Positions 11,915 through 60,368 of a stretch of DNA of 64,000 nt are shown in pieces. The stretch covers positions 62,001 to 126,000 of the IMG/VR virus record IMGVR_UViG_3300018962_000001, one strand, 5' to 3'. Position numbers and translations under genes: made by a program. Position 1 is the stretch's first letter. Every line of letters begins with the position of its first letter. The notes beneath the pieces were generated by a model. That model worked only from the letters and a program-made list of their open reading frames with translations, was not told the origin of the DNA and did not search any database.

Positions 11915-13393
11915 ATGAGCAAAGGGGGGGGCAGTATGCACAGAGCGCCAATCAGCCAGATTGATTCCACAATCATTCCATTCGAGGTTCGCCAGATTAT
12001 GATGGCGATCGAGGATGCGGGGGGGCACCCCTGGATTGTCGGTGGCTTTATTCGGAATATCCTGATCCGGTCAATCCATCCGTCGATTCCCTGCGAGATC
12101 GACTTTAAAGATATTGACCTGGAAGTCTTCGATCTGGAGCCGGAGGCGGTTTTTGCCATTGTGCGGCCCTTGGTCCCGCATTGCCAGATGGATGTCGGGA
12201 ATCAGTTCCCGGTCATCAAGGCCCGGACCCACAGTGGAATCGAGCTGGATGTTGCCGCGCCACGGCGGGAGCGTAAGACTGGAGCGGGCCATCGGGGCTT
12301 TACGGTCACGGTAGATGTCCATATGCCACTGGCCGAGGCCGCCCGGCGACGAGACTTTCGGATGAATGCGATTGCGCTGGATCTGTGCGGTACGATCGCT
12401 GACCCAATGGACGGCATGGCCGATATTGTCCATCAGGTGATTCGCGTATGTGATCCGGCGGGGTTCCATGAAGATCCGAACCGCGTGCCGCGCGCCATGC
12501 AATTTGCCAGTCGCTTTGATTTTGCCCCGGATGCCGAGTGTATCGCCGCCGCCGCCGCCGCCATTGGCGAGGCTCCCCGGATTCCTGCCGAGATCTGGTG
12601 GGGGGAGTGGGAAAAGTGGGCATCGAAGGGCGTTCGACCCAGCCGAGGACTGCTGTTTCTCCGTGCCTGCGGCTGGATCGGTCTGTTCCCAGAGGCGGCT
12701 GCCTTGATCGGGACGGCCCAGGACCCGGAATGGCACCCGGAAGGCGATGTCTGGACGCATAGCTGCTTAAGCGCCGATCGTGCGGCGGAGATCGCCGCAC
12801 GGGACGGGATCACGGGACGCGCGCGCGCGGCCTTCGTGATTGGCTGCTTTGCGCATGATTTCGGGAAGGCCGAGCCGGGCGTCAGTTTCGTCAAAGACGG
12901 ACGGATTGTGTCACCCGGCCATGATGAGGCCGGAGTTGCTCCGGCGACTCGGTTCTTGAATCGAATCAACGCGCCGCATGCAGTACGCGATCAGGTCATT
13001 GCCTGTGTCCGTCACCATATGGCGCATGTTGGGGTTGAACCAAGTCAGCGAATCGTCAATCGCTGGGCAAAACGATTCCATCCGGCCTCGATTCAGGAGA
13101 TTGCGCGGGTCGCTGAGGCCGACCATTGCGCCCGCCCACCGTTGCCAGGCGGTGCCCCAATGGCTCCCTTTGTGGCGCTGGCCGAGTCCGAGGGGGTTGC
13201 CCATCAGCGCCCGAAGCGGATTATCGAGGGTGGCCGCATCATCGAGATATTTGGGATCGCACCCGGACCACAGGTAGGCATGATCGTCCGGGCTGCCGAG
13301 CAAGCCCAAATTGAAGATCGGGCTTTTAGCGATGAGGCGGGAGCCATTCAATGGATTGCCAACCAGTTCGATCTTGCTCTTGTAACCCCTTGA
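11915..13393 (+). CDS. cca: CCA-adding tRNA nucleotidyltransferase (class II) with HD domain
   Basis: VGGFIRN, KDIDL, RRDFRMNAIA, EDPNRVPRAMQFASRF, HPEGDVWTH...AHDFGK. Confidence 0.85.
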   Translation: MSKGGGSMHRAPISQIDSTIIPFEVRQIMMAIEDAGGHPWIVGGFIRNILIRSIHPSIPCEIDFKDIDLEVFDLEPEAVFAIVRPLVPHCQMDVGNQFPVIKARTHSGIELDVAAPRRERKTGAGHRGFTVTVDVHMPLAEAARRRDFRMNAIALDLCGTIADPMDGMADIVHQVIRVCDPAGFHEDPNRVPRAMQFASRFDFAPDAECIAAAAAAIGEAPRIPAEIWWGEWEKWASKGVRPSRGLLFLRACGWIGLFPEAAALIGTAQDPEWHPEGDVWTHSCLSADRAAEIAARDGITGRARAAFVIGCFAHDFGKAEPGVSFVKDGRIVSPGHDEAGVAPATRFLNRINAPHAVRDQVIACVRHHMAHVGVEPSQRIVNRWAKRFHPASIQEIARVAEADHCARPPLPGGAPMAPFVALAESEGVAHQRPKRIIEGGRIIEIFGIAPGPQVGMIVRAAEQAQIEDRAFSDEAGAIQWIANQFDLALVTP

Positions 13394-32697: not shown

Positions 32698-33053
32698 TTG
32701 TTGAAATCTTCCATAATCGCATTCAGTGCCGCCGGTGTGGCGGTGTGATCGAATCGTTGCACGTCAACGATTTTCGCTGGTGTCCCTGTCGCGCCGTTGC
32801 AGTTGATGGGGGGCATGAGTATCTGCGCTGGCTGGGGAATCGTGAAGACATTGTTGATCTGTCGGAGACGCGCGAGATCCCTGACGAGCAGTGGGAAGCC
32901 CAGATGGATGCCGATCTGAATGCCGAGGTTGCGGCTATCATTGGCGAGGTGGCATGCGATTCTGAACCGCGCCCTGATTTCCCCCGGTTTCGGGCCGCGC
33001 TTGCCGATCTGCTTGCCGATCGGCAACGTCACCCTCCTCGCACGAGCGAGTGA
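32694..33053 (+). CDS. Zn-ribbon phage protein (paralog 2)
   Basis: IFHNRIQCRRCGGVIES...CPC..VAVDGG. Confidence 0.7.
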   Translation: MIVEIFHNRIQCRRCGGVIESLHVNDFRWCPCRAVAVDGGHEYLRWLGNREDIVDLSETREIPDEQWEAQMDADLNAEVAAIIGEVACDSEPRPDFPRFRAALADLLADRQRHPPRTSE

Positions 33054-33060
33054 TCACTCC

Positions 33061-33089
33061 TTGACGTATGCTTGTATTTGCGCTACTGT
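33061..33089 (+). promoter_or_regulatory. sigma70-type promoter
   Basis: TTGACG-N17-TACTGT. Confidence 0.65.
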
Positions 33090-33117
33090 GAGGCATACCG
33101 AATCAGGAGGACTCACG

Positions 33118-34383
33118 ATGGCTGAGGTATTGGACTCCATCGCCCTGTACTGCGGTACGGGCGGATCAAACAAGGTCTGGGGAGCTGCGGTCGTGCAGGA
33201 CGGCGATACTGTCACGTATCTGTACTGCAACGGCGCGGTTGGTACGGCGATGACTCCCAAGATCGAACGCATGGCGGATTCTCCAACGGCCCGCAAGCAT
33301 TACGAAAAAAAGGTCCGCGAGAAGCGAGGCAAGGGCTACGTGCCGGTGGACCTGGGCGATCCCTTTTATGGTGTCGGTCGCGTGCTCGCGGCAGCCCATC
33401 CCGCGCTTGCGGACTCCGGCGGCGGCGGCGCAGCCAGCTATGTTGCCGAAACGGTGGCCCGCGATACGCGCGTGGTCGTGAGCCGCGTGTTGCCGGTGGA
33501 TGAGTCCCGCTTTGCGGCAGTGATGGCCGATCCCGCCTATGGCCTGACCGAGAAGGCCAACGGGAAGCGAGTCACGGTGGAGTGGACCGGCACGGAACTG
33601 CGCGCCTATAACCGGAAAGGCCAGCGCCTCCCGGTCGTGCCACGCGCGGCGGAATCCCTCCCCAGCATCGGCATCCCCTTTTTGATCGACGGTGAAGACA
33701 TCCCTGGCGGGGGATATGTCATGTTCGATCTCTTAGAGTTCAACGGCGGTTCGATCCGGCACCTGGAATTTGCGAGTCGGATTCGGACCTTAGCGCGGCT
33801 CGTGACCGAGGCCGGATTGCTGATCATGTATGGAGCGGAGGTCGCCGATAGCCTGAGCGATACGCCAGGGCTGGCGCTCCTCTCGCCGGTGACGAGCACC
33901 GACGAGAAACACTCCACCTTGCAGGCGATTCGGGCCGCGAACGGCGAGGGCGTGATCCTGCGGCGCATGGACGCGCCTTCGGTCGAGGGGAATAGTCGGG
34001 ACGAACTCAAATACAAGTTTACGCCGCAGATTGATGCGGCGGTGATCGGTATGAAACCTGGGCGTCAACATGGATCGCTGCGCCTGGGGCTGTATCGCCC
34101 TGATGGATCACTCATTGAGATCGGATTTGTGTATAACGGGTTAACAACCGCTGATCTCGAACACATCACCCAGCTCTATCTCAACGGCCAGGAGCCGGTG
34201 TTAGCGGTGAGCTTCCTGCAAGCACGCACCGTGGGTATCCGCCTGGTCGAGCCAACCACAACAATCGCCGATCTTCGCACCGATAAGAGAGCCAGAGATT
34301 GCACCACCGAGCAGCTGATCGAGATTTTAGGAGCCGATCGCGCCCCGTTGATCGCCGCAGCGCCTGCGGTTGTGCCGAATTGA
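33118..34383 (+). CDS. WGR-domain ATP-dependent polynucleotide (DNA) ligase
   Basis: N-terminal SNKVW...KVREKRGKGY (WGR-like); ligase motifs TEKANG, LIDGE, YVMFDLL, GEGVILR, ELKYK; C-terminal OB-like region. Confidence 0.7.
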   Translation: MAEVLDSIALYCGTGGSNKVWGAAVVQDGDTVTYLYCNGAVGTAMTPKIERMADSPTARKHYEKKVREKRGKGYVPVDLGDPFYGVGRVLAAAHPALADSGGGGAASYVAETVARDTRVVVSRVLPVDESRFAAVMADPAYGLTEKANGKRVTVEWTGTELRAYNRKGQRLPVVPRAAESLPSIGIPFLIDGEDIPGGGYVMFDLLEFNGGSIRHLEFASRIRTLARLVTEAGLLIMYGAEVADSLSDTPGLALLSPVTSTDEKHSTLQAIRAANGEGVILRRMDAPSVEGNSRDELKYKFTPQIDAAVIGMKPGRQHGSLRLGLYRPDGSLIEIGFVYNGLTTADLEHITQLYLNGQEPVLAVSFLQARTVGIRLVEPTTTIADLRTDKRARDCTTEQLIEILGADRAPLIAAAPAVVPN

Positions 34384-35921: not shown

Positions 35922-36024
35922 CAATCTGCGGGGAGTCTACTAGACTCCTGGGTACATCGGTTGGCACTCCGGGTACCATTTTCCTCCCCCCACTGGCCGG
36001 TGGCGGATCAAAGGAGGAATCTGT

Positions 36025-37599
36025 ATGCCAAGTGCTATCTTCAGGCCGAAAGAGTTGCCCTGGAGCGCGCCTGAACTGCCACGCACGCTCGCGGGCTTGT
36101 ACACGTGGAACGGGCAAACCTACCTGTGTCGCCCCGGCCAGGCCAGCAACCAGGATCGCTATCGACGGCGGAACTGGGCGGAGTTGGAACCCACTCGTGG
36201 GACGTATAACTGGAGCAAATTCCAGCAGGAGATCGACGCTGCAAAAGCCAAGAAGCAGCGCGTCTGGCTGGGCTTGCCGGTGTATGCGGGAGCATCTGAG
36301 TATGGGCCGTACGTGCCTGAGTATCTTGCCAAAGCCGGACCCAGTGAGTGGTACGAAGATTCGTGGTATCCCAACTTCAATAAGCCCGACACGTTCGCCG
36401 CGTTAGCCGATCTTCTCACCGCATTTGATGCTTGGCTCACCAGTACGAACCAGTATAAATATGTGAGTCATATCCAGTGCCTCGCCTTCGGGCGCTACGG
36501 AGAAGGCTACTATCCCTGGCAGTTGTACGCGAAACATCGGGCGGATCGAACCGATCATCCCCTCCTGCCTACCGAAGCGACCACTCGTAAGATCATCGAT
36601 CTCTACCACCGCCTGTTTGGGTCCAAAGTGCGACTCGACATGACCTTACGGAATGATTTTCGCTTTGGCTACGCAATGCTCCAAAAGCCCTTCTGGGGGT
36701 GGAGTCGGATGGCGCTGGGTCATCCCGGCCAGATGGCGAATATCGCGGAAGCCGTGAATAGCGCGCTCACCATTGATGGCGTTCGGATCGGCCCGCTTGT
36801 CGCGGAGCGCTGGCAACGGGCTGCGGTGCTGCTGGAGTGGATCGGACTCGCGAAGGAACATGCGCCGCTGCAATGGAAACACGCGCTTGGGCAGATTAAG
36901 GATGTCCACCCGGCCTTGGTTGGGAACGGCAACTTCATCGAGTATAGCACTGGCCCGTATAACTTCTGGAACGGCAGCTGTGCGGATCAGCCAACAACGA
37001 AGTGGACGGCTGAGAATATCGCCGACATGGTGCAGATCGGGAAGCAGGCCGGGTATCGATTTGTGGTCGAGGAGTTAGCGCTCAGTGGCGATTTCACGCC
37101 GGGGAGCGTGCTACGCGCGCAGGGTCGTATCCTGAATCGTGGTCTTACGCCAGCGCATGAGCCGATTGAGGCGCGTCTCCATCTCCATGCGGTTGATCAG
37201 CCAGGGCGCGTGGCCTTTGCGCTCCCGCTGGGCGTGAACTTCCAAACCTTGTTAACCGCCGCGCCCGTTGATGCAGGCCAGAAGTTACCGGACGATCTTC
37301 CCCCTGGCCGCTATGAAGCGCATGTGTATCTCCCTGGCATTGAGGGAGTTACCCGTCCGATTCCCCTGGCAATCGAGGGCGTGAATCCGGGCGGTGGGTA
37401 TCCACTAGGAGCCTTCGACATTACGAAGGCTGCGCCGCCGCCGCCGCCGGACGACACAGATACCCCGCCGCCGCCGGTACCGAATGCGGCCTTGCTCGCC
37501 CTCGTATCCCGGCTCACCGCTGTTCAAGGCGAGATCGACTCGATCGTCACTGCCCTCCAGGGGGAAGCCCAGCCCCGTCCCACGACCGGCCAGGACTAA
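36025..37599 (+). CDS. putative glycoside hydrolase (beta-galactosidase-like TIM barrel, DUF4832-like C-terminus) with Pro-rich tail
   Basis: RRNWAELEPTRGTYNWS, PEYL, FGRYGEG, GYRFVV...GRILNRGLTP. Confidence 0.6.
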   Translation: MPSAIFRPKELPWSAPELPRTLAGLYTWNGQTYLCRPGQASNQDRYRRRNWAELEPTRGTYNWSKFQQEIDAAKAKKQRVWLGLPVYAGASEYGPYVPEYLAKAGPSEWYEDSWYPNFNKPDTFAALADLLTAFDAWLTSTNQYKYVSHIQCLAFGRYGEGYYPWQLYAKHRADRTDHPLLPTEATTRKIIDLYHRLFGSKVRLDMTLRNDFRFGYAMLQKPFWGWSRMALGHPGQMANIAEAVNSALTIDGVRIGPLVAERWQRAAVLLEWIGLAKEHAPLQWKHALGQIKDVHPALVGNGNFIEYSTGPYNFWNGSCADQPTTKWTAENIADMVQIGKQAGYRFVVEELALSGDFTPGSVLRAQGRILNRGLTPAHEPIEARLHLHAVDQPGRVAFALPLGVNFQTLLTAAPVDAGQKLPDDLPPGRYEAHVYLPGIEGVTRPIPLAIEGVNPGGGYPLGAFDITKAAPPPPPDDTDTPPPPVPNAALLALVSRLTAVQGEIDSIVTALQGEAQPRPTTGQD

Positions 37600-37638
37600 C
37601 CCGCCACCGCACGCCAGGGAGTTGTCCCTGGCGTGCCC

Positions 37639-37667
37639 TTGACACTAGCACCCTTCTGCGCTATGCT
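37639..37667 (+). promoter_or_regulatory. sigma70-type promoter
   Basis: TTGACA-N17-TATGCT directly before the tRNA. Confidence 0.8.
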
Positions 37668-37683
37668 TCCCGCAGCTAATCAC

Positions 37684-37766
37684 GGGGAGGTGGCCGAGTG
37701 GCAAGGCAGCGGTCTTCTAAACCGCCGGGCGAGCAGCCCGCACAGGTTCGATCCCTGTCCTCCCCG
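37684..37766 (+). tRNA. tRNA with TCT (Arg) anticodon in a Ser-type body
   Basis: GGGGAGG/CCTCCCC, loop CT-TCT-AA, long variable arm CGGGC/GCCCG, G73, no CCA. Confidence 0.85.
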
Positions 37767-37789
37767 CAAGAAGTCCTTATAGGAATCCC

Positions 37790-37984
37790 ATGTATCTGAC
37801 GAAAGCAGAGCGAAACACGCTCCTCCTCGTGGTGAATGAGCGCCTGGCGGGAGGACCTGACGATCTTGCCGATGCGTTGGGTATTGATCTTGATGAAGCC
37901 GAGCAGGAGGTGAGTCGCCTTCAGTTGATCGCAACCAAGCTGGCTCACTCATTAGGAGGACGCGATCGTGGACCCCATCGTTGA
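37790..37984 (+). CDS. hypothetical protein
   Basis: AGGA RBS. Confidence 0.55.
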   Translation: MYLTKAERNTLLLVVNERLAGGPDDLADALGIDLDEAEQEVSRLQLIATKLAHSLGGRDRGPHR

Positions 37985-38510
37985 TCAAATTGGTCATCTT
38001 ACCGCAGCCGATCTCGGTAATCTGCTGTATGAGGGCCGGGCCATGCCGGATCGTCCACCATTAACGGATGATTTGCTCGAACAGGCGCAATACGCCTTTG
38101 CCCGCTGGGTACAACTTGCCTCAGTTACCACAACCTTTCCTGATTGGCACACCGCATGGGCCGCATACCGCGCCGCTGGAAAGCCCCACTGGCCGTTGCC
38201 GCCCGCGTCGATTGTGGATCGCTGGATCTGCCAGGGTGGGTGGCGTGCCTGGGTAAAGGGCGAACGGGGACAAGTCTTTATCGATCTCATCAGGTTAGAG
38301 TCCTATGATTGGATCATGAGTCTTCGACGATCGTTTCGTGGCGGGACGGACTCGGATCTTCTGATGAGCAAGCGGCTCACGGGCACCCTGGAATCTGTTC
38401 AGCAGCAAGCGGAGGAGGCTGCCGCAACCCACCTTGGCTATTACCGCTGGCAGGACATGGATCTGAACCGTCCCTATCACCCCTTCGCTGAGCGGCGGCG
38501 GACCCTATGA
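37968..38510 (+). CDS. hypothetical protein
   Basis: GGAGG RBS. Confidence 0.65.
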   Translation: MDPIVDQIGHLTAADLGNLLYEGRAMPDRPPLTDDLLEQAQYAFARWVQLASVTTTFPDWHTAWAAYRAAGKPHWPLPPASIVDRWICQGGWRAWVKGERGQVFIDLIRLESYDWIMSLRRSFRGGTDSDLLMSKRLTGTLESVQQQAEEAAATHLGYYRWQDMDLNRPYHPFAERRRTL

Positions 38511-39166
38511 GTGTGCGGATCAAGTACCCGCGCACACCGCATTTCATGTGGTCACGAGGAGTGGCTTCCGATGATCAGCTCCTGGCCTACCTGCGCCATT
38601 GGATTGACCAGCCGGTGGTGATCACCGCGAAGATGGACGGAGAGAACACCACCATCTATGGTGATGGACTCCATGCCCGATCGATTGATAGCCGGAGCCA
38701 TCCCTCGCGATCGTGGGTCCAGCAGTGGTCGGCGACCTGGAGGCATGAACTCCCTCGCGGCTGGCGGGTATGCGGCGAAAATCTGTATGCCCGGCACTCG
38801 ATCCACTACCGGCATTTAACGAGCTATTTCTACGGGATCTCGATCTGGAATGACGAGAACCTATGTCTGGCCTGGGATGATACAACCATGTACTTTACAC
38901 TGCTTGGCATCACGCCGGTCCCGGAGCTATGGCGCGGGGTGTGGAGTCCGCGTACGGAGCGCTGGCTGCGGGATGGCGCACTTGCAGCAGAAACACATGC
39001 GGGTGATCCGCTCGAAGGTTATGTGGTGCGCCTGGCTGGGCCGATTCGGTATCGTGATTTCTCAGACTCGGTTGCCAAGTATGTCCGCGCGCACCACGTC
39101 CAAACCACGGATCGCTGGAGTCGCGATCAGATCGTCCCCAATCGGCTTCGCCAATCCGACAGCTAG
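38507..39166 (+). CDS. ATP-dependent RNA ligase family protein
   Basis: KYPRTPH, motif I TAKMDGEN, CGENLYARHSIHY, FYGISIW, EGYVVR, KYVR. Confidence 0.85.
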   Translation: MSVRIKYPRTPHFMWSRGVASDDQLLAYLRHWIDQPVVITAKMDGENTTIYGDGLHARSIDSRSHPSRSWVQQWSATWRHELPRGWRVCGENLYARHSIHYRHLTSYFYGISIWNDENLCLAWDDTTMYFTLLGITPVPELWRGVWSPRTERWLRDGALAAETHAGDPLEGYVVRLAGPIRYRDFSDSVAKYVRAHHVQTTDRWSRDQIVPNRLRQSDS

Positions 39167-39202
39167 ATCCTCCCCGACCAGGCACTCCTTTGAGATCAGT
39201 AC

Positions 39203-39231
39203 TTGACACGCGCACAATTCCGCGCTATGAT
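39203..39231 (+). promoter_or_regulatory. promoter of the Ubl-Ro60 operon
   Basis: TTGACA-N17-TATGAT. Confidence 0.85.
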
Positions 39232-39284
39232 ACAGCCCTGCGTAGCGTTGTACGCTCTGTATCAGGACTCGTAGGAGGGTCGCG

Positions 39285-39512
39285 ATGGCTGATGTTACCG
39301 TGGAAAAGATGATGATCCATATTCGCTACGGCGGAACGTCGCAGGACGTTCCGGCGGATACGCTGGATATTGGCAACTTGTCGAGCGATACCGATGTCCG
39401 TAATGCGCTGGCCCGGCACCTGGGTGTCGATCCGGGGCGCTTGAGCGGGTATCGCGTTGACCGCGAGCCAACCGGCAATCTCACCGTTCGTCCAGAAGCC
39501 GTTTTCGGCTAG
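39285..39512 (+). CDS. ubiquitin-like (beta-grasp) modifier ending in Gly
   Basis: 75 aa, C-terminus LTVRPEAVFG*, co-operonic with JAB and E1. Confidence 0.7.
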   Translation: MADVTVEKMMIHIRYGGTSQDVPADTLDIGNLSSDTDVRNALARHLGVDPGRLSGYRVDREPTGNLTVRPEAVFG

Positions 39513-56209: not shown

Positions 56210-56286
56210 GGCGCTGTCGCCAAGCGGATCAAGGCACTGGTCTTCGGAACCAGCATCCGCAGGTTCGAATCCTGCCAGCGTCGCCA
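56210..56286 (+). tRNA. tRNA-Arg(TCG)
   Basis: loop CT-TCG-GA, GCCA. Confidence 0.95.
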
Positions 56287-58824: not shown

Positions 58825-58911
58825 GGAGAGTTGGCCGAGTGGGAAGGCACCGCTTTGCTAAAGCGGCGAGGCCGTAAGGTTGCGTGGGTTCGATCCCCAC
58901 ACTCTCCCCCA
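58825..58911 (+). tRNA. tRNA-Ser(GCT)
   Basis: long variable arm, CCA; C73. Confidence 0.9.
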
Positions 58912-60292: not shown

Positions 60293-60368
60293 GCCCGCAT
60301 AGCTCAGTGGACAGAGCAGCAGCCTTCTAAGCTGCGTGTCGCCGGTTCGATCCCGGCTGCGGGTGCCA
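60293..60368 (+). tRNA. tRNA-Arg(TCT)
   Basis: canonical, A20 present, GCCA. Confidence 0.95.

What the first reader, a model, noticed from the sequence alone, without database searches (positions are those of the whole stretch)
37639..37766. Stand-alone tRNA with an Arg (UCU) anticodon on a serine body
Seen: own promoter; long variable arm, G73, C20 rather than the A20 seen in the canonical Arg(TCT) at 60293; D arm almost identical to Ser(GCT) at 58825. TCT is one change from GCT. Established: bacterial SerRS ignores the anticodon and reads the variable arm, while ArgRS needs A20. Inference: it would insert Ser at AGA codons, giving targeted mistranslation (for example of AGA-rich host or defence genes) or acting as a nuclease decoy.
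Basis: partly seen in the sequence, partly recalled or inferred. Interest (0 to 1): 0.65.

Follow-up and report, generated by a model that had tools for sequence, protein, structure and literature searches.

The report
Phage serine-type tRNA with arginine anticodon
A 205-kb soil-crust phage carries a well-formed tRNA with the body of a bacterial serine tRNA but the anticodon for the rare arginine codon AGA, so it probably puts serine where arginine is coded, though nothing yet shows that it is made, charged or used.

Summary
Window 37684-37766 (+) is a real tRNA (Rfam 60.2 bits, every stem fully paired). It has a 16-nt variable arm, G73, G1-C72/G2-C71, C20 and the anticodon loop CUUCUAA (UCU).

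From U8 to C43 it matches the widespread bacterial tRNA-Ser(UGA), apart from a D loop 2 nt shorter (plus one base change) and anticodon bases 35-36. So it is two changes from UGA, not one from GCU.

The promoter belongs to a family of about 18 copies in this phage. No terminator follows the tRNA, so it probably leads a unit of tRNA, orf64, orf180 and an RNA ligase, rather than standing alone.

The phage has no SerRS or ArgRS. It encodes a CCA-adding enzyme. Its three canonical Arg tRNAs all keep A20. It almost never uses AGA (43 or fewer of 55,191 codons).

The most likely reading is a serine-charged decoder of AGA(/AGG), a natural missense suppressor (confidence about 0.42). Charging, expression and conservation are untested, and no relatives were found. 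Rivals are Arg or dual charging, a non-translational role linked to RNA repair, and a tolerated relic. The closest precedents are the (9/3) allo-tRNAs with AGA/AGG anticodons and tRNAProX.

The parts
37609..37636 (+). 12-bp GC-rich hairpin just after the stop codon of the upstream DUF4832 gene; probably the terminator or insulator of the upstream unit
   Evidence: -26.6 kcal/mol, z -5.0, 0 of 200 shuffles fold as well. No T run follows.
37639..37667 (+). Sigma-70-type promoter (TTGACA, 17 nt, TATGCT), one member of a repeated phage promoter family with a conserved TGCGC block before the -10 element
   Evidence: 10 of 12 matches; about 18 sites in the genome share TTGACA...(T)GCGCTAT(G/A)(C/A)T, most of them before genes or tRNA blocks. 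These include 43786 (head of the tRNA array) and 39203 (the next unit).
37684..37766 (+). tRNA with a Ser(UGA)-type long-arm body, canonical 7/5 cloverleaf, anticodon UCU (37716-37718), C20 (37702), variable arm 37726-37741, G73 (37766), no encoded CCA
   Evidence: gene call, 60.2 bits. (83% identity to bacterial tRNA-Ser(UGA); 115 of 120 genomic tRNAs with this D arm and anticodon stem are Ser(UGA)).
37790..37984 (+). orf64, which starts 24 nt after the tRNA and has an AGGA 5 nt before its ATG; no family match
   Evidence: Also called as a gene in the public contig. There is no hairpin between the tRNA and this ORF.
37968..38510 (+). orf180, whose ends overlap orf64 and the RNA ligase gene; an orphan
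   Evidence: no family; no Atlas lead; only itself among 5.8 billion proteins.
38507..39166 (+). RNA ligase (PF09414 nucleotidyltransferase domain, 219 aa); last gene before the next promoter at 39203
   Evidence: 1.4e-25; phrog_24030, 1.7e-63; next promoter at 39203-39231.
60293..60368 (+). Canonical tRNA-Arg(UCU) of the same phage (short-arm body, A20, G73, encoded CCA) with the same anticodon loop CUUCUAA; it would compete for AGA
   Evidence: 65.7 bits.
11915..13393 (+). Phage CCA-adding/repair enzyme, which could complete the CCA-less tRNA
   Evidence: phrog_2244, 8.4e-52; the best match is the multifunctional CCA addition/repair protein, 5.9e-41, but below the curated cut-off.

Best explanation
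This is an intact tRNA gene that descends from a bacterial-type tRNA-Ser(UGA). Its anticodon has become UCU through changes at positions 35 and 36.

Proposed mechanism:
1. Host RNA polymerase transcribes it from a phage-family sigma-70 promoter, as the 5' element of a short unit (tRNA, orf64, orf180, RNA ligase).
2. It is cut out of the transcript and given CCA by the phage or host CCA-adding enzyme.
3. The host seryl-tRNA synthetase charges it with serine, because that enzyme reads the long variable arm, the tertiary shape and the acceptor end (G1-C72, G2-C71, G73), not the anticodon. It lacks A20, so ArgRS should charge it poorly.
4. On the ribosome it pairs with AGA (and AGG if U34 is modified) and inserts Ser in competition with Arg-tRNA(UCU).

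The phage's own genes almost lack AGA, so the cost falls mainly on host or other foreign messages.

Shown: the gene, its fold, its Ser(UGA) ancestry, the missing A20, the promoter family, the operon layout and the AGA scarcity. Inferred: transcription, serylation, decoding and any benefit.
For: - Real and well formed: 60.2 bits, all stems Watson-Crick, and the usual conserved bases present (U8, A14, G18G19, U33, GTTCGA, G15:C48).
- Ser body: 115 of 120 genomic tRNAs sharing its D arm and anticodon stem are Ser(UGA), and none is UCU. Best full-length identity is 69/83, against 69% to the nearest tRNA of the phage itself, Ser(GCU).
- In 94 distinct bacterial Ser(UGA) tRNAs, G73 occurs in 92 and G1G2 in all 94. 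The variable region spans 14-20 nt, and 16 nt (as in the target) occurs in 15.
- Contigs in the same biocrust runs match 37687-37727 with a TT insertion and 2-3 other letters. That is the difference expected of a canonical Ser(UGA).
- Arg control inside the genome: Arg(UCU) 60293, Arg(UCG) 56210 and Arg(GCG) all have A20; the target has C20.
- Identity rules: PMC9976931.
- Ser-identity tRNAs with non-Ser anticodons do insert Ser in E. coli (PMC5389517).
- No phage SerRS or ArgRS, so host enzymes decide the charging.
- The promoter is one of about 18 family members, and no terminator follows the tRNA.
- A CCA-adding enzyme is present.
- AGA accounts for 43 of 55,191 codons in my gene calls. At least 10 of these lie in SD-like GGAGA just before an alternative start codon.
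Against: - There are no RNA data, no charging data and no relative carrying the same gene, so selection on the UCU anticodon cannot be shown.
- The D loop has 7 nt, against 9 nt in all 94 bacterial Ser(UGA) tRNAs. Position 3-70 is G-C rather than A-U. SerRS recognises tertiary shape, so serylation efficiency is uncertain.
- C35, U36 and G73 are Arg determinants that the tRNA does carry.
- A phage long-arm tRNA with a CCA anticodon and a Trp-like acceptor end (L218) shows that a Ser-type body need not mean Ser identity.
- The phage also carries a canonical Arg(UCU), and AGA is probably rare in a high-GC host too, so the effect may be small.
- The host is unknown.
Confidence: 0.42

Rival explanations
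1. It is an arginine-accepting or dual Ser/Arg tRNA. Host ArgRS uses C35, U36 and G73 and tolerates C20, so the tRNA mostly or partly delivers Arg to AGA. It would then be an odd extra Arg(UCU) isoacceptor on a foreign body, for example one that a nuclease recognising the normal tRNA-Arg body cannot cut.
For: C35, U36 and G73 are listed Arg determinants. All three canonical phage Arg tRNAs have G73. The anticodon loop CUUCUAA is identical to that of the canonical Arg(UCU). In yeast, position 20 matters little and C35 with U/G36 dominate. L218 shows a long-arm body carrying the acceptor and anticodon features of another amino acid. The phage carries three UCU tRNAs despite about 0.05-0.08% AGA codons, which fits an anti-defence role better than codon supply.
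Against: A20 is the main determinant for bacterial (E. coli) ArgRS and is recognised in the T. thermophilus complex. The phage keeps A20 in all three canonical Arg tRNAs but not here. Every Ser determinant checked is present, so SerRS would compete strongly.
Confidence: 0.15
2. It has a non-translational role tied to RNA repair or anti-defence. The tRNA would act as a decoy or sponge for a host nuclease that reads the UCU anticodon loop, as a substrate or partner of the co-transcribed RNA ligase, or simply as an RNase P-processed leader that shapes the 5' end of the ligase mRNA.
For: The tRNA is first in a unit that ends with an RNA ligase, with no terminator between them. The phage also encodes a CCA addition/repair-type enzyme. 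Phage tRNAs are known to counter anticodon nucleases (PMC10264068, PMC11464382 and PMC11555353). Some Ser-like allo-tRNAs are charged or present but not used in translation (PMC5389517). RNA-ligase genes of distant phages also sit among tRNA genes.
Against: No nuclease specific for tRNA-Arg(UCU) is known for this unknown host. A decoy would not need a fully canonical, chargeable cloverleaf. orf64 and orf180 give no functional clue. Gene order is not conserved in the ligase relatives.
Confidence: 0.2
3. It is a tolerated relic. A duplicated or acquired Ser(UGA) gene drifted at its anticodon, and it persists because the phage almost lacks AGA codons, so the harm is negligible and there is no selected function.
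For: The phage holds other irregular tRNAs: a short-arm body with a UGA anticodon and a broken acceptor stem at 43840; a weak Arg(UCU) at 45538 that shares its ends with Gly(UCC) at 45765; and five ARAGORN calls below the Rfam threshold. Ser-type tRNAs with UCU turn up sporadically in metagenomes, some by a single G34U change. AGA is nearly absent from the phage.
Against: Both changes lie exactly in the anticodon while all 25 stem pairs stay Watson-Crick. It outscores every other long-arm tRNA in the window. It keeps a family-type promoter. An expressed, chargeable missense tRNA is rarely neutral: allo-tRNAs kill E. coli on induction.
Confidence: 0.2
4. It is an assembly or sequencing error of a normal serine anticodon.
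For: Only one sample covers the tRNA.
Against: Two different assemblies of that sample agree, at depth 12.5 with no variant listed. The anticodon stem points to a UGA ancestor, which would need two adjacent errors.
Confidence: 0.03

Closest known systems
(9/3) allo-tRNAs of Acidobacteria and soil metagenomes (Mukai et al. 2017, PMC5389517)
   Same: They are Ser-identity tRNAs (long variable arm, G73) that carry non-Ser anticodons. The paper states that the 9/3 class has anticodons for AGA/AGG, Leu codons and UAA. Tested members insert Ser at Leu codons in E. coli and are toxic. They also come from soil.
   Different: Allo-tRNAs are defined by an 8/4 or 9/3 acceptor/T-stem layout, whereas this tRNA is a canonical 7/5 cloverleaf. 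Those are bacterial and often lie near toxin-antitoxin genes; this one is on a 205-kb phage, in a unit with an RNA ligase.
tRNAProX / ProRSx of Streptomyces and Kitasatospora (reviewed in PMC11415595)
   Same: These are natural bacterial tRNAs whose body specifies one amino acid and whose anticodon specifies another, causing deliberate missense decoding.
   Different: They have Pro identity, unusual A33/G33, and are paired with a dedicated synthetase paralogue. Here U33 is normal and the phage encodes no synthetase.
Engineered tRNASer(UCU) in yeast (10.1101/2021.05.12.443880; also PMC12082455)
   Same: The design is the same: a serine tRNA given the UCU anticodon, used there to study arginine-to-serine mistranslation (titles and term counts only; I did not read the text).
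   Different: That tRNA is synthetic, eukaryotic and attenuated by a secondary mutation. This one is natural, bacterial-type and phage-borne.
Phage tRNAs that counter tRNA-cleaving defences (PMC10264068, PMC11464382, PMC11555353)
   Same: It is a phage-encoded tRNA lying beside RNA repair genes, and the phage's tRNA set does not track its codon use.
   Different: Those tRNAs keep the identity of the host tRNA they replace. This one pairs an Arg anticodon with a Ser body.
Other phage tRNAs with a Ser(UGA)-type body and a changed anticodon, found here (L218; L189/L227)
   Same: They share the D arm and anticodon stem and lie on large viral contigs. Their anticodons are CCA (L218) and UUA, the ochre-reading anticodon (L189/L227).
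   Different: L218 also has a Trp-like acceptor end (A1-U72, G73). L189/L227 have a 41-nt variable region and read a stop codon. None is related to the target outside the shared core.

Membership tests
Bacterial long-arm (type II) tRNA-Ser | Long variable arm with a paired stem | tested here: met
   16-nt region with a 5-bp stem. This lies within the 14-20 nt range of 94 bacterial Ser(UGA) tRNAs.
Bacterial long-arm (type II) tRNA-Ser | G73 discriminator, G1-C72, G2-C71, C11-G24 | tested here: met
   Read. G73 occurs in 92 of 94 and G1G2 in 94 of 94 reference tRNAs. Position 3-70 is G-C instead of the usual A-U.
Bacterial long-arm (type II) tRNA-Ser | Ser-type D arm: 3-bp stem, G13.A22, G15:C48, and a 9-nt D loop | tested here: inconclusive
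   The stem and the G15:C48 pair are met. The loop has 7 nt, against 9 nt in all 94 references. The phage's own Ser(GCU) also has a 7-nt loop.
Bacterial long-arm (type II) tRNA-Ser | Anticodon for a serine codon (NGA or GCU) | tested here: not met
   The anticodon is UCU.
Bacterial long-arm (type II) tRNA-Ser | Charged by SerRS | not testable with these tools
   This needs an aminoacylation assay.
Bacterial tRNA-Arg | A20 in the D loop | tested here: not met
   C20 at window 37702. The three canonical Arg tRNAs of the phage have A20.
Bacterial tRNA-Arg | C35, U/G36, A/G73 | tested here: met
   UCU anticodon and G73.
Bacterial tRNA-Arg | Short (4-5 nt) variable region | tested here: not met
   The variable region has 16 nt.
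allo-tRNA (8/4 or 9/3) | Acceptor stem of 8 or 9 bp with a T stem of 4 or 3 bp | tested here: not met
   The layout is 7 bp plus 5 bp. An eighth acceptor pair would be U.U.
tRNA-Sec | 8/5 layout, long D stem, UCA anticodon | tested here: not met
   The layout is 7/5, the D stem has 3 bp and the anticodon is UCU.
tRNAProX-type mistranslation module | Dedicated synthetase paralogue encoded with the tRNA | tested here: not met
   The phage genome has no class II core (PF00587) and no ArgRS core (PF00750); all 14 control genomes were positive.
attP-type tRNA copy of a temperate element | Integrase in the element; partial or junction-type tRNA | tested here: not met
   The genome has no PF00589 or PF00239 match, and the tRNA is full length. 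By contrast, L143-145 do look like this case.

The most novel reading that the evidence does not exclude
A large lytic phage deliberately expresses a serine-charged decoder of AGA/AGG from an early-type promoter, together with an RNA ligase. Its own genome is purged of AGA. Host or rival-element messages that use AGA, such as low-GC defence islands, are therefore mistranslated, or AGA decoding survives a host attack on tRNA-Arg(UCU), while phage proteins are spared. Together with the Ser-bodied CCA and UUA tRNAs found on other viral contigs, this would make reuse of the anticodon-blind SerRS a recurring phage strategy.
Probability: 0.2. Interest if true: 0.85.

Novelty: new variant of a known kind. 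Interest (0 to 1): 0.58.

Why it matters
Natural tRNAs that break the codon table on purpose are known from only a few bacterial cases (allo-tRNAs and tRNAProX). The 2024 review of mistranslating tRNAs does not contain the word 'phage'. A phage-borne, canonical-shaped Ser tRNA reading an Arg codon would extend deliberate or tolerated sense-codon ambiguity to viruses. It would link that ambiguity to the current debate on why phages carry tRNAs: codon supply or counter-defence. It would also supply a compact natural part for Arg-to-Ser recoding. The claim needs only one in vitro charging assay and one reporter experiment to test.

Tried and rejected
- Relatives. Megablast of 37000-39000 against cultured phages found nothing. 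The RNA-ligase relatives in IMG/VR are about 50% identical or less, share no gene order and lack the tRNA. The DUF4832 neighbour has no viral relative. DnaB relatives are 36% identical or less. Conservation therefore could not be tested.
- Expression. No RNA run holds the region.
- AGA meaning from conserved columns. Only 18 AGA codons lie beyond codon 30, and none sits at a position I could call conserved. One is next to an M23-like HxGxD motif and two are in the tail of the ligase-like protein. This gave no verdict.
- orf180. No match in Pfam, PHROGs, NCBIfam, the Atlas or the word search. I did not fold it, because there is no alignment.
- Host. Not identified. The Ser(UGA) core is shared across many phyla, so it gives no resolution.
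- attP idea: rejected.
- allo-tRNA and tRNA-Sec membership: rejected on stem layout.
- Descent from the phage's Ser(GCU): rejected, because the anticodon stems are unrelated and identity is only 69%.
- The first viral pattern scan returned only an ordinary short-arm Arg tRNA.

Full report
**Setting.** The window is bases 62001-126000 of a 204,685-bp IMG/VR virus record rated complete, with 59-62% GC. It was assembled from a biocrust metagenome. ARAGORN finds 39 tRNA genes in the genome, 36 of them in the window, nearly all in an array from 43.8 to 60.4 kb. No cultured or IMG/VR phage within reach is close to it. The best protein identities are about 50% for the RNA ligase and 36% or less for DnaB.

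**The object.**
- Window 37684-37766 (+) is a tRNA by ARAGORN and Rfam (60.2 bits, E 3.7e-12).
- Among the 31 tRNAs above the Rfam threshold in the window it ranks 14th, above every other long-arm tRNA: Leu(UAA) 57.8, Ser(GCU) 56.8, Leu(CAA) 50.8. Ser(CGA) and Tyr fall below threshold.
- All stems are Watson-Crick: acceptor 7 bp, D stem 3 bp plus G13.A22, anticodon stem 5 bp, variable stem 5 bp, T stem 5 bp.
- U8, A14, G18G19, A21, U33, GTTCGA and the G15:C48 pair are all in place.
- The layout is the ordinary 7/5, so it is neither an allo-tRNA nor a tRNA-Sec.
- The anticodon loop is CUUCUAA, the same seven letters as in the phage's canonical tRNA-Arg(UCU) at 60293.
- Position 20 is C, the discriminator is G, and CCA is not encoded. 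Several other tRNAs of this phage also lack CCA, and the phage encodes a CCA-adding/repair-type enzyme at 11915-13393.

**Whose body is it?**
- I scanned one genome per prokaryotic species for tRNAs with the target's D arm and anticodon stem, leaving the anticodon free. Of these, 115 are tRNA-Ser(UGA), one is Ser(CGA), one is Ser(ACU), three are short Cys(GCA), and none is UCU.
- From U8 to C43 the target equals the common bacterial Ser(UGA), apart from a D loop 2 nt shorter (plus one base change) and anticodon bases 35-36.
- Full-length identity reaches 69/83. The nearest tRNA in the phage itself, Ser(GCU), is 69% identical and has an unrelated anticodon stem.
- Parts not fixed by the search pattern agree with a Ser body. 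In 94 distinct bacterial Ser(UGA) tRNAs, G73 occurs in 92 and G1G2 in all 94. The variable region spans 14-20 nt, with 16 nt in 15 of them.
- Other contigs in the same biocrust runs match 37687-37727 with a TT insertion and 2-3 other letters. That is the difference expected of a canonical Ser(UGA).
The likely ancestor, however, is Ser(UGA) (two anticodon changes), not Ser(GCU) (one).
- Two departures from the bacterial consensus matter for charging: the 7-nt D loop (9 nt in all 94 references, though the phage's Ser(GCU) also has 7) and G3-C70 instead of A3-U70.

**Who would charge it?**
- The phage has no class II synthetase core and no ArgRS core, while all 14 control genomes were positive. 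Host enzymes therefore decide.
[quoted passage not shown] G1-C72 and G2-C71 are conserved in bacterial tRNA-Ser. G73 is a determinant in vivo and blocks LeuRS and TyrRS.
- The same review gives arginine identity as A20 (the main determinant in E. coli), C35, U/G36 and A/G73.
- The target carries every Ser element that I could check. It carries three of the four Arg elements but not A20.
- As an internal control, the phage's Arg(UCU) at 60293, Arg(UCG) at 56210 and Arg(GCG) all keep A20 and G73.
- Serylation is therefore the best prediction, and some arginylation cannot be excluded.
- Ser-identity tRNAs with foreign anticodons do work in a bacterial ribosome. Allo-tRNAs inserted Ser at Leu codons in E. 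coli and were toxic when induced (PMC5389517).

**Transcription unit.**
- TTGACA-17-TATGCT at 37639-37667 is not a chance hit. About 18 sites in the genome share TTGACA, a spacer ending in (T)GCGC, and TAT(G/A)(C/A)T. They include the head of the tRNA array (43786) and the next unit downstream (39203).
- A strong hairpin (-26.6 kcal/mol, z -5) closes the upstream gene at 37609-37636.
- Nothing terminator-like lies between the tRNA and orf64, which starts 24 nt later behind an AGGA.
- orf64, orf180 and a 219-aa RNA ligase (PF09414, 1.4e-25; phrog_24030, 1.7e-63) overlap end to end.
- The tRNA is thus most likely the first element of an operon of tRNA, orf64, orf180 and RNA ligase. This qualifies the description 'stand-alone, own promoter'.
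- orf64 and orf180 are orphans.

**Codon use.**
- My own gene calls give 267 genes and 55,191 codons. AGA occurs 43 times (0.78 per 1000; 0.9% of Arg codons) and AGG 151 times.
- Out of frame, the AGA triplet is 12-18 times more frequent.
- 25 of the 43 lie in the first 30 codons of longest-ORF calls. At least 10 of those sit in SD-like GGAGA just before an alternative start. The true count is therefore nearer 25-33.
- The phage is nearly blind to AGA misreading. From memory, this level of AGA is also usual for GC-rich genomes, so it is not proof of adaptation.
- Three of the 39 tRNAs carry UCU, so the tRNA set does not follow codon demand.
- The 18 internal AGA codons gave no usable signal on whether Ser or Arg is meant.

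**Is it an error?** A contig built by a different assembler from the same sample is identical across 36000-39500, at depth 12.5 and with no variant listed. A second sample holds parts of the phage but not the tRNA. An error would need two adjacent wrong letters in the anticodon. I consider it very unlikely, but no independent sample confirms the sequence.

**How common are such tRNAs?**
- A metagenome scan for a Ser-type D arm, the loop CUUCUAA and a long variable arm gave nine loci, eight with long-arm UCU tRNAs.
- Two of them (L139, L141) are Ser(GCU)-type bodies one base away from GCU.
- One tRNA, seen in three samples (L143-145), has a mismatched 5' acceptor end and sits beside integrases, a primase and an RHS protein. 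It is probably a junction copy in an integrative element.
- None is related to the target.
- A viral scan for the Ser(UGA) core with a free anticodon gave 98 loci, 91 of them with UGA.
- That scan also found an 88-nt long-arm tRNA with anticodon CCA and a Trp-like A1-U72/G73 end, inside a 19-tRNA array of a 153.6-kb phage (L218).
- It further found a Ser-like tRNA with G73, encoded CCA, anticodon UUA (ochre-reading) and a 41-nt variable region on two viral contigs (L189, L227).
- Re-aiming the Ser(UGA) body therefore recurs in phages. L218 also warns that a Ser-type body does not guarantee Ser identity.

**Verdict.** The most likely mechanism is a serine-charged decoder of AGA(/AGG) co-expressed with an RNA ligase. 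This remains a prediction at confidence about 0.4, because expression, charging and conservation are untested. The three main rivals cannot be excluded with sequence alone:
- Arg or dual charging.
- A non-translational role in an RNA-repair or counter-defence unit.
- A tolerated relic in a phage whose tRNA set contains several irregular members.

The proposed purposes, targeted mistranslation of AGA-rich host genes or a nuclease decoy, have no direct support. The closest known things are the (9/3) allo-tRNAs with AGA/AGG anticodons and tRNAProX. This tRNA differs in being a canonical 7/5 cloverleaf, phage-borne and without a dedicated synthetase. I rate it a new variant of a known kind.

Noticed in passing
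whole genome; in the window e.g. 7319, 20769, 30132, 37639, 39203, 43786, 44268, 53060: About 18 copies of an extended promoter motif: TTGACA, a spacer ending in (T)GCGC, then TAT(G/A)(C/A)T. Almost all are on the + strand in the early/tRNA half of the genome. This looks like the phage's own class of host-RNA-polymerase promoters.
   Followed up: partly
window 43840-43910 (flanks 43831-43838 and 43921-43928): ARAGORN calls 'tRNA-Ser(tga)' here, but it is a 71-nt short-arm body with a Phe-like D arm and only 4 acceptor pairs; Rfam matches only model positions 4-67. It is enclosed by an 8-nt inverted repeat (GGAGAGCA ... TGCTCTCC) and sits right after a consensus promoter at 43786. So a Ser(UGA) anticodon sits on a non-Ser body while the Ser(UGA) body carries UCU.
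   Followed up: partly
window 45538-45612 and 45765-45836: A second tRNA with anticodon UCU (39.2 bits, U20, mismatched 1-72 pair) and a Gly(UCC) (below the Rfam threshold) share the same 5' end and the same T arm and 3' acceptor strand. This looks like a duplicate pair whose anticodon arms diverged.
   Followed up: no
window 45655-45731 and genome 128911-128987: tRNA-Leu(UAG) is a 77-nt short-arm tRNA with A73. It shares 22 identical bases of T arm and 3' acceptor strand with Arg(GCG). This is another case where body and anticodon may have been re-paired.
   Followed up: no
window 58825-58911: The phage's tRNA-Ser(GCU) has C73 instead of the G73 found in 92 of 94 bacterial Ser(UGA) tRNAs. The UCU tRNA is therefore the more Ser-like of the two at the acceptor end.
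   Followed up: no
window 45765, 48622, 56013, 57646, 59909: Five ARAGORN tRNA calls (Gly tcc, Tyr gta, Cys gca, Gln ctg, Ser cga) do not reach the Rfam tRNA gathering score.
   Followed up: no
window 11915-13393, 32920-34383, 38507-39166, 43130-43789: A set of nucleic-acid repair and modification genes surrounds the tRNA region: a CCA addition/repair-type enzyme, a WGR domain fused to an ATP-dependent DNA-ligase-like protein, an RNA ligase and a ThiF-family protein.
   Followed up: partly
window 34288-34296; genome 46119-46133: Two of the rare internal AGA codons occur as close pairs: codons 457 and 459 of the ligase-like gene, and codons 184 and 188 of a 309-aa gene. By my rough estimate about 0.03 such pairs are expected if 18 codons were spread evenly. 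This may reflect local composition or a stalling site.
   Followed up: no
L218:28-115 (IMGVR_UViG_3300031993_000018, 153.6 kb): An 88-nt long-arm tRNA with the Ser(UGA)-type D arm and anticodon stem but anticodon CCA, A1-U72 and G73 (Trp-like acceptor features). It comes first in a 19-tRNA array.
   Followed up: partly
L189:9080-9193 and L227 (viral contigs of 98.8 and 52 kb): A Ser-like tRNA (G73, encoded CCA, Ser(UGA)-type core) with anticodon UUA, which reads the UAA stop codon, and a 41-nt variable region. ARAGORN does not call it. It may be a phage ochre suppressor.
   Followed up: partly
L141:1380-1568; L139:3983-4073: These are metagenome contigs with a Ser(GCU)-type tRNA whose anticodon is UCU, one base from GCU. 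In L141 it lies directly after a normal Ser(UGA). It could be a polymorphism, an error or real AGR-reading Ser tRNAs in bacteria.
   Followed up: no
L143, L144:8762-8849, L145: The same Ser-like UCU tRNA with a mismatched 5' acceptor end appears in three samples. It lies next to two integrases, a primase, an HTH protein, an IS110 transposase and an RHS/DUF6443 protein, so it is probably an att-junction copy in a Bacteroidota-type integrative element.
   Followed up: partly
L119 (Patescibacteria MAG): A Ser(UGA)-type body with anticodon ACU, which would read the Ser codon AGU. This is an unusual choice, since bacteria normally use GCU.
   Followed up: no
window 37428-37453: A (GCC)n run inside the DUF4832 gene encodes a proline-rich stretch. 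Similar short runs occur at several other places on the same contig.
   Followed up: no
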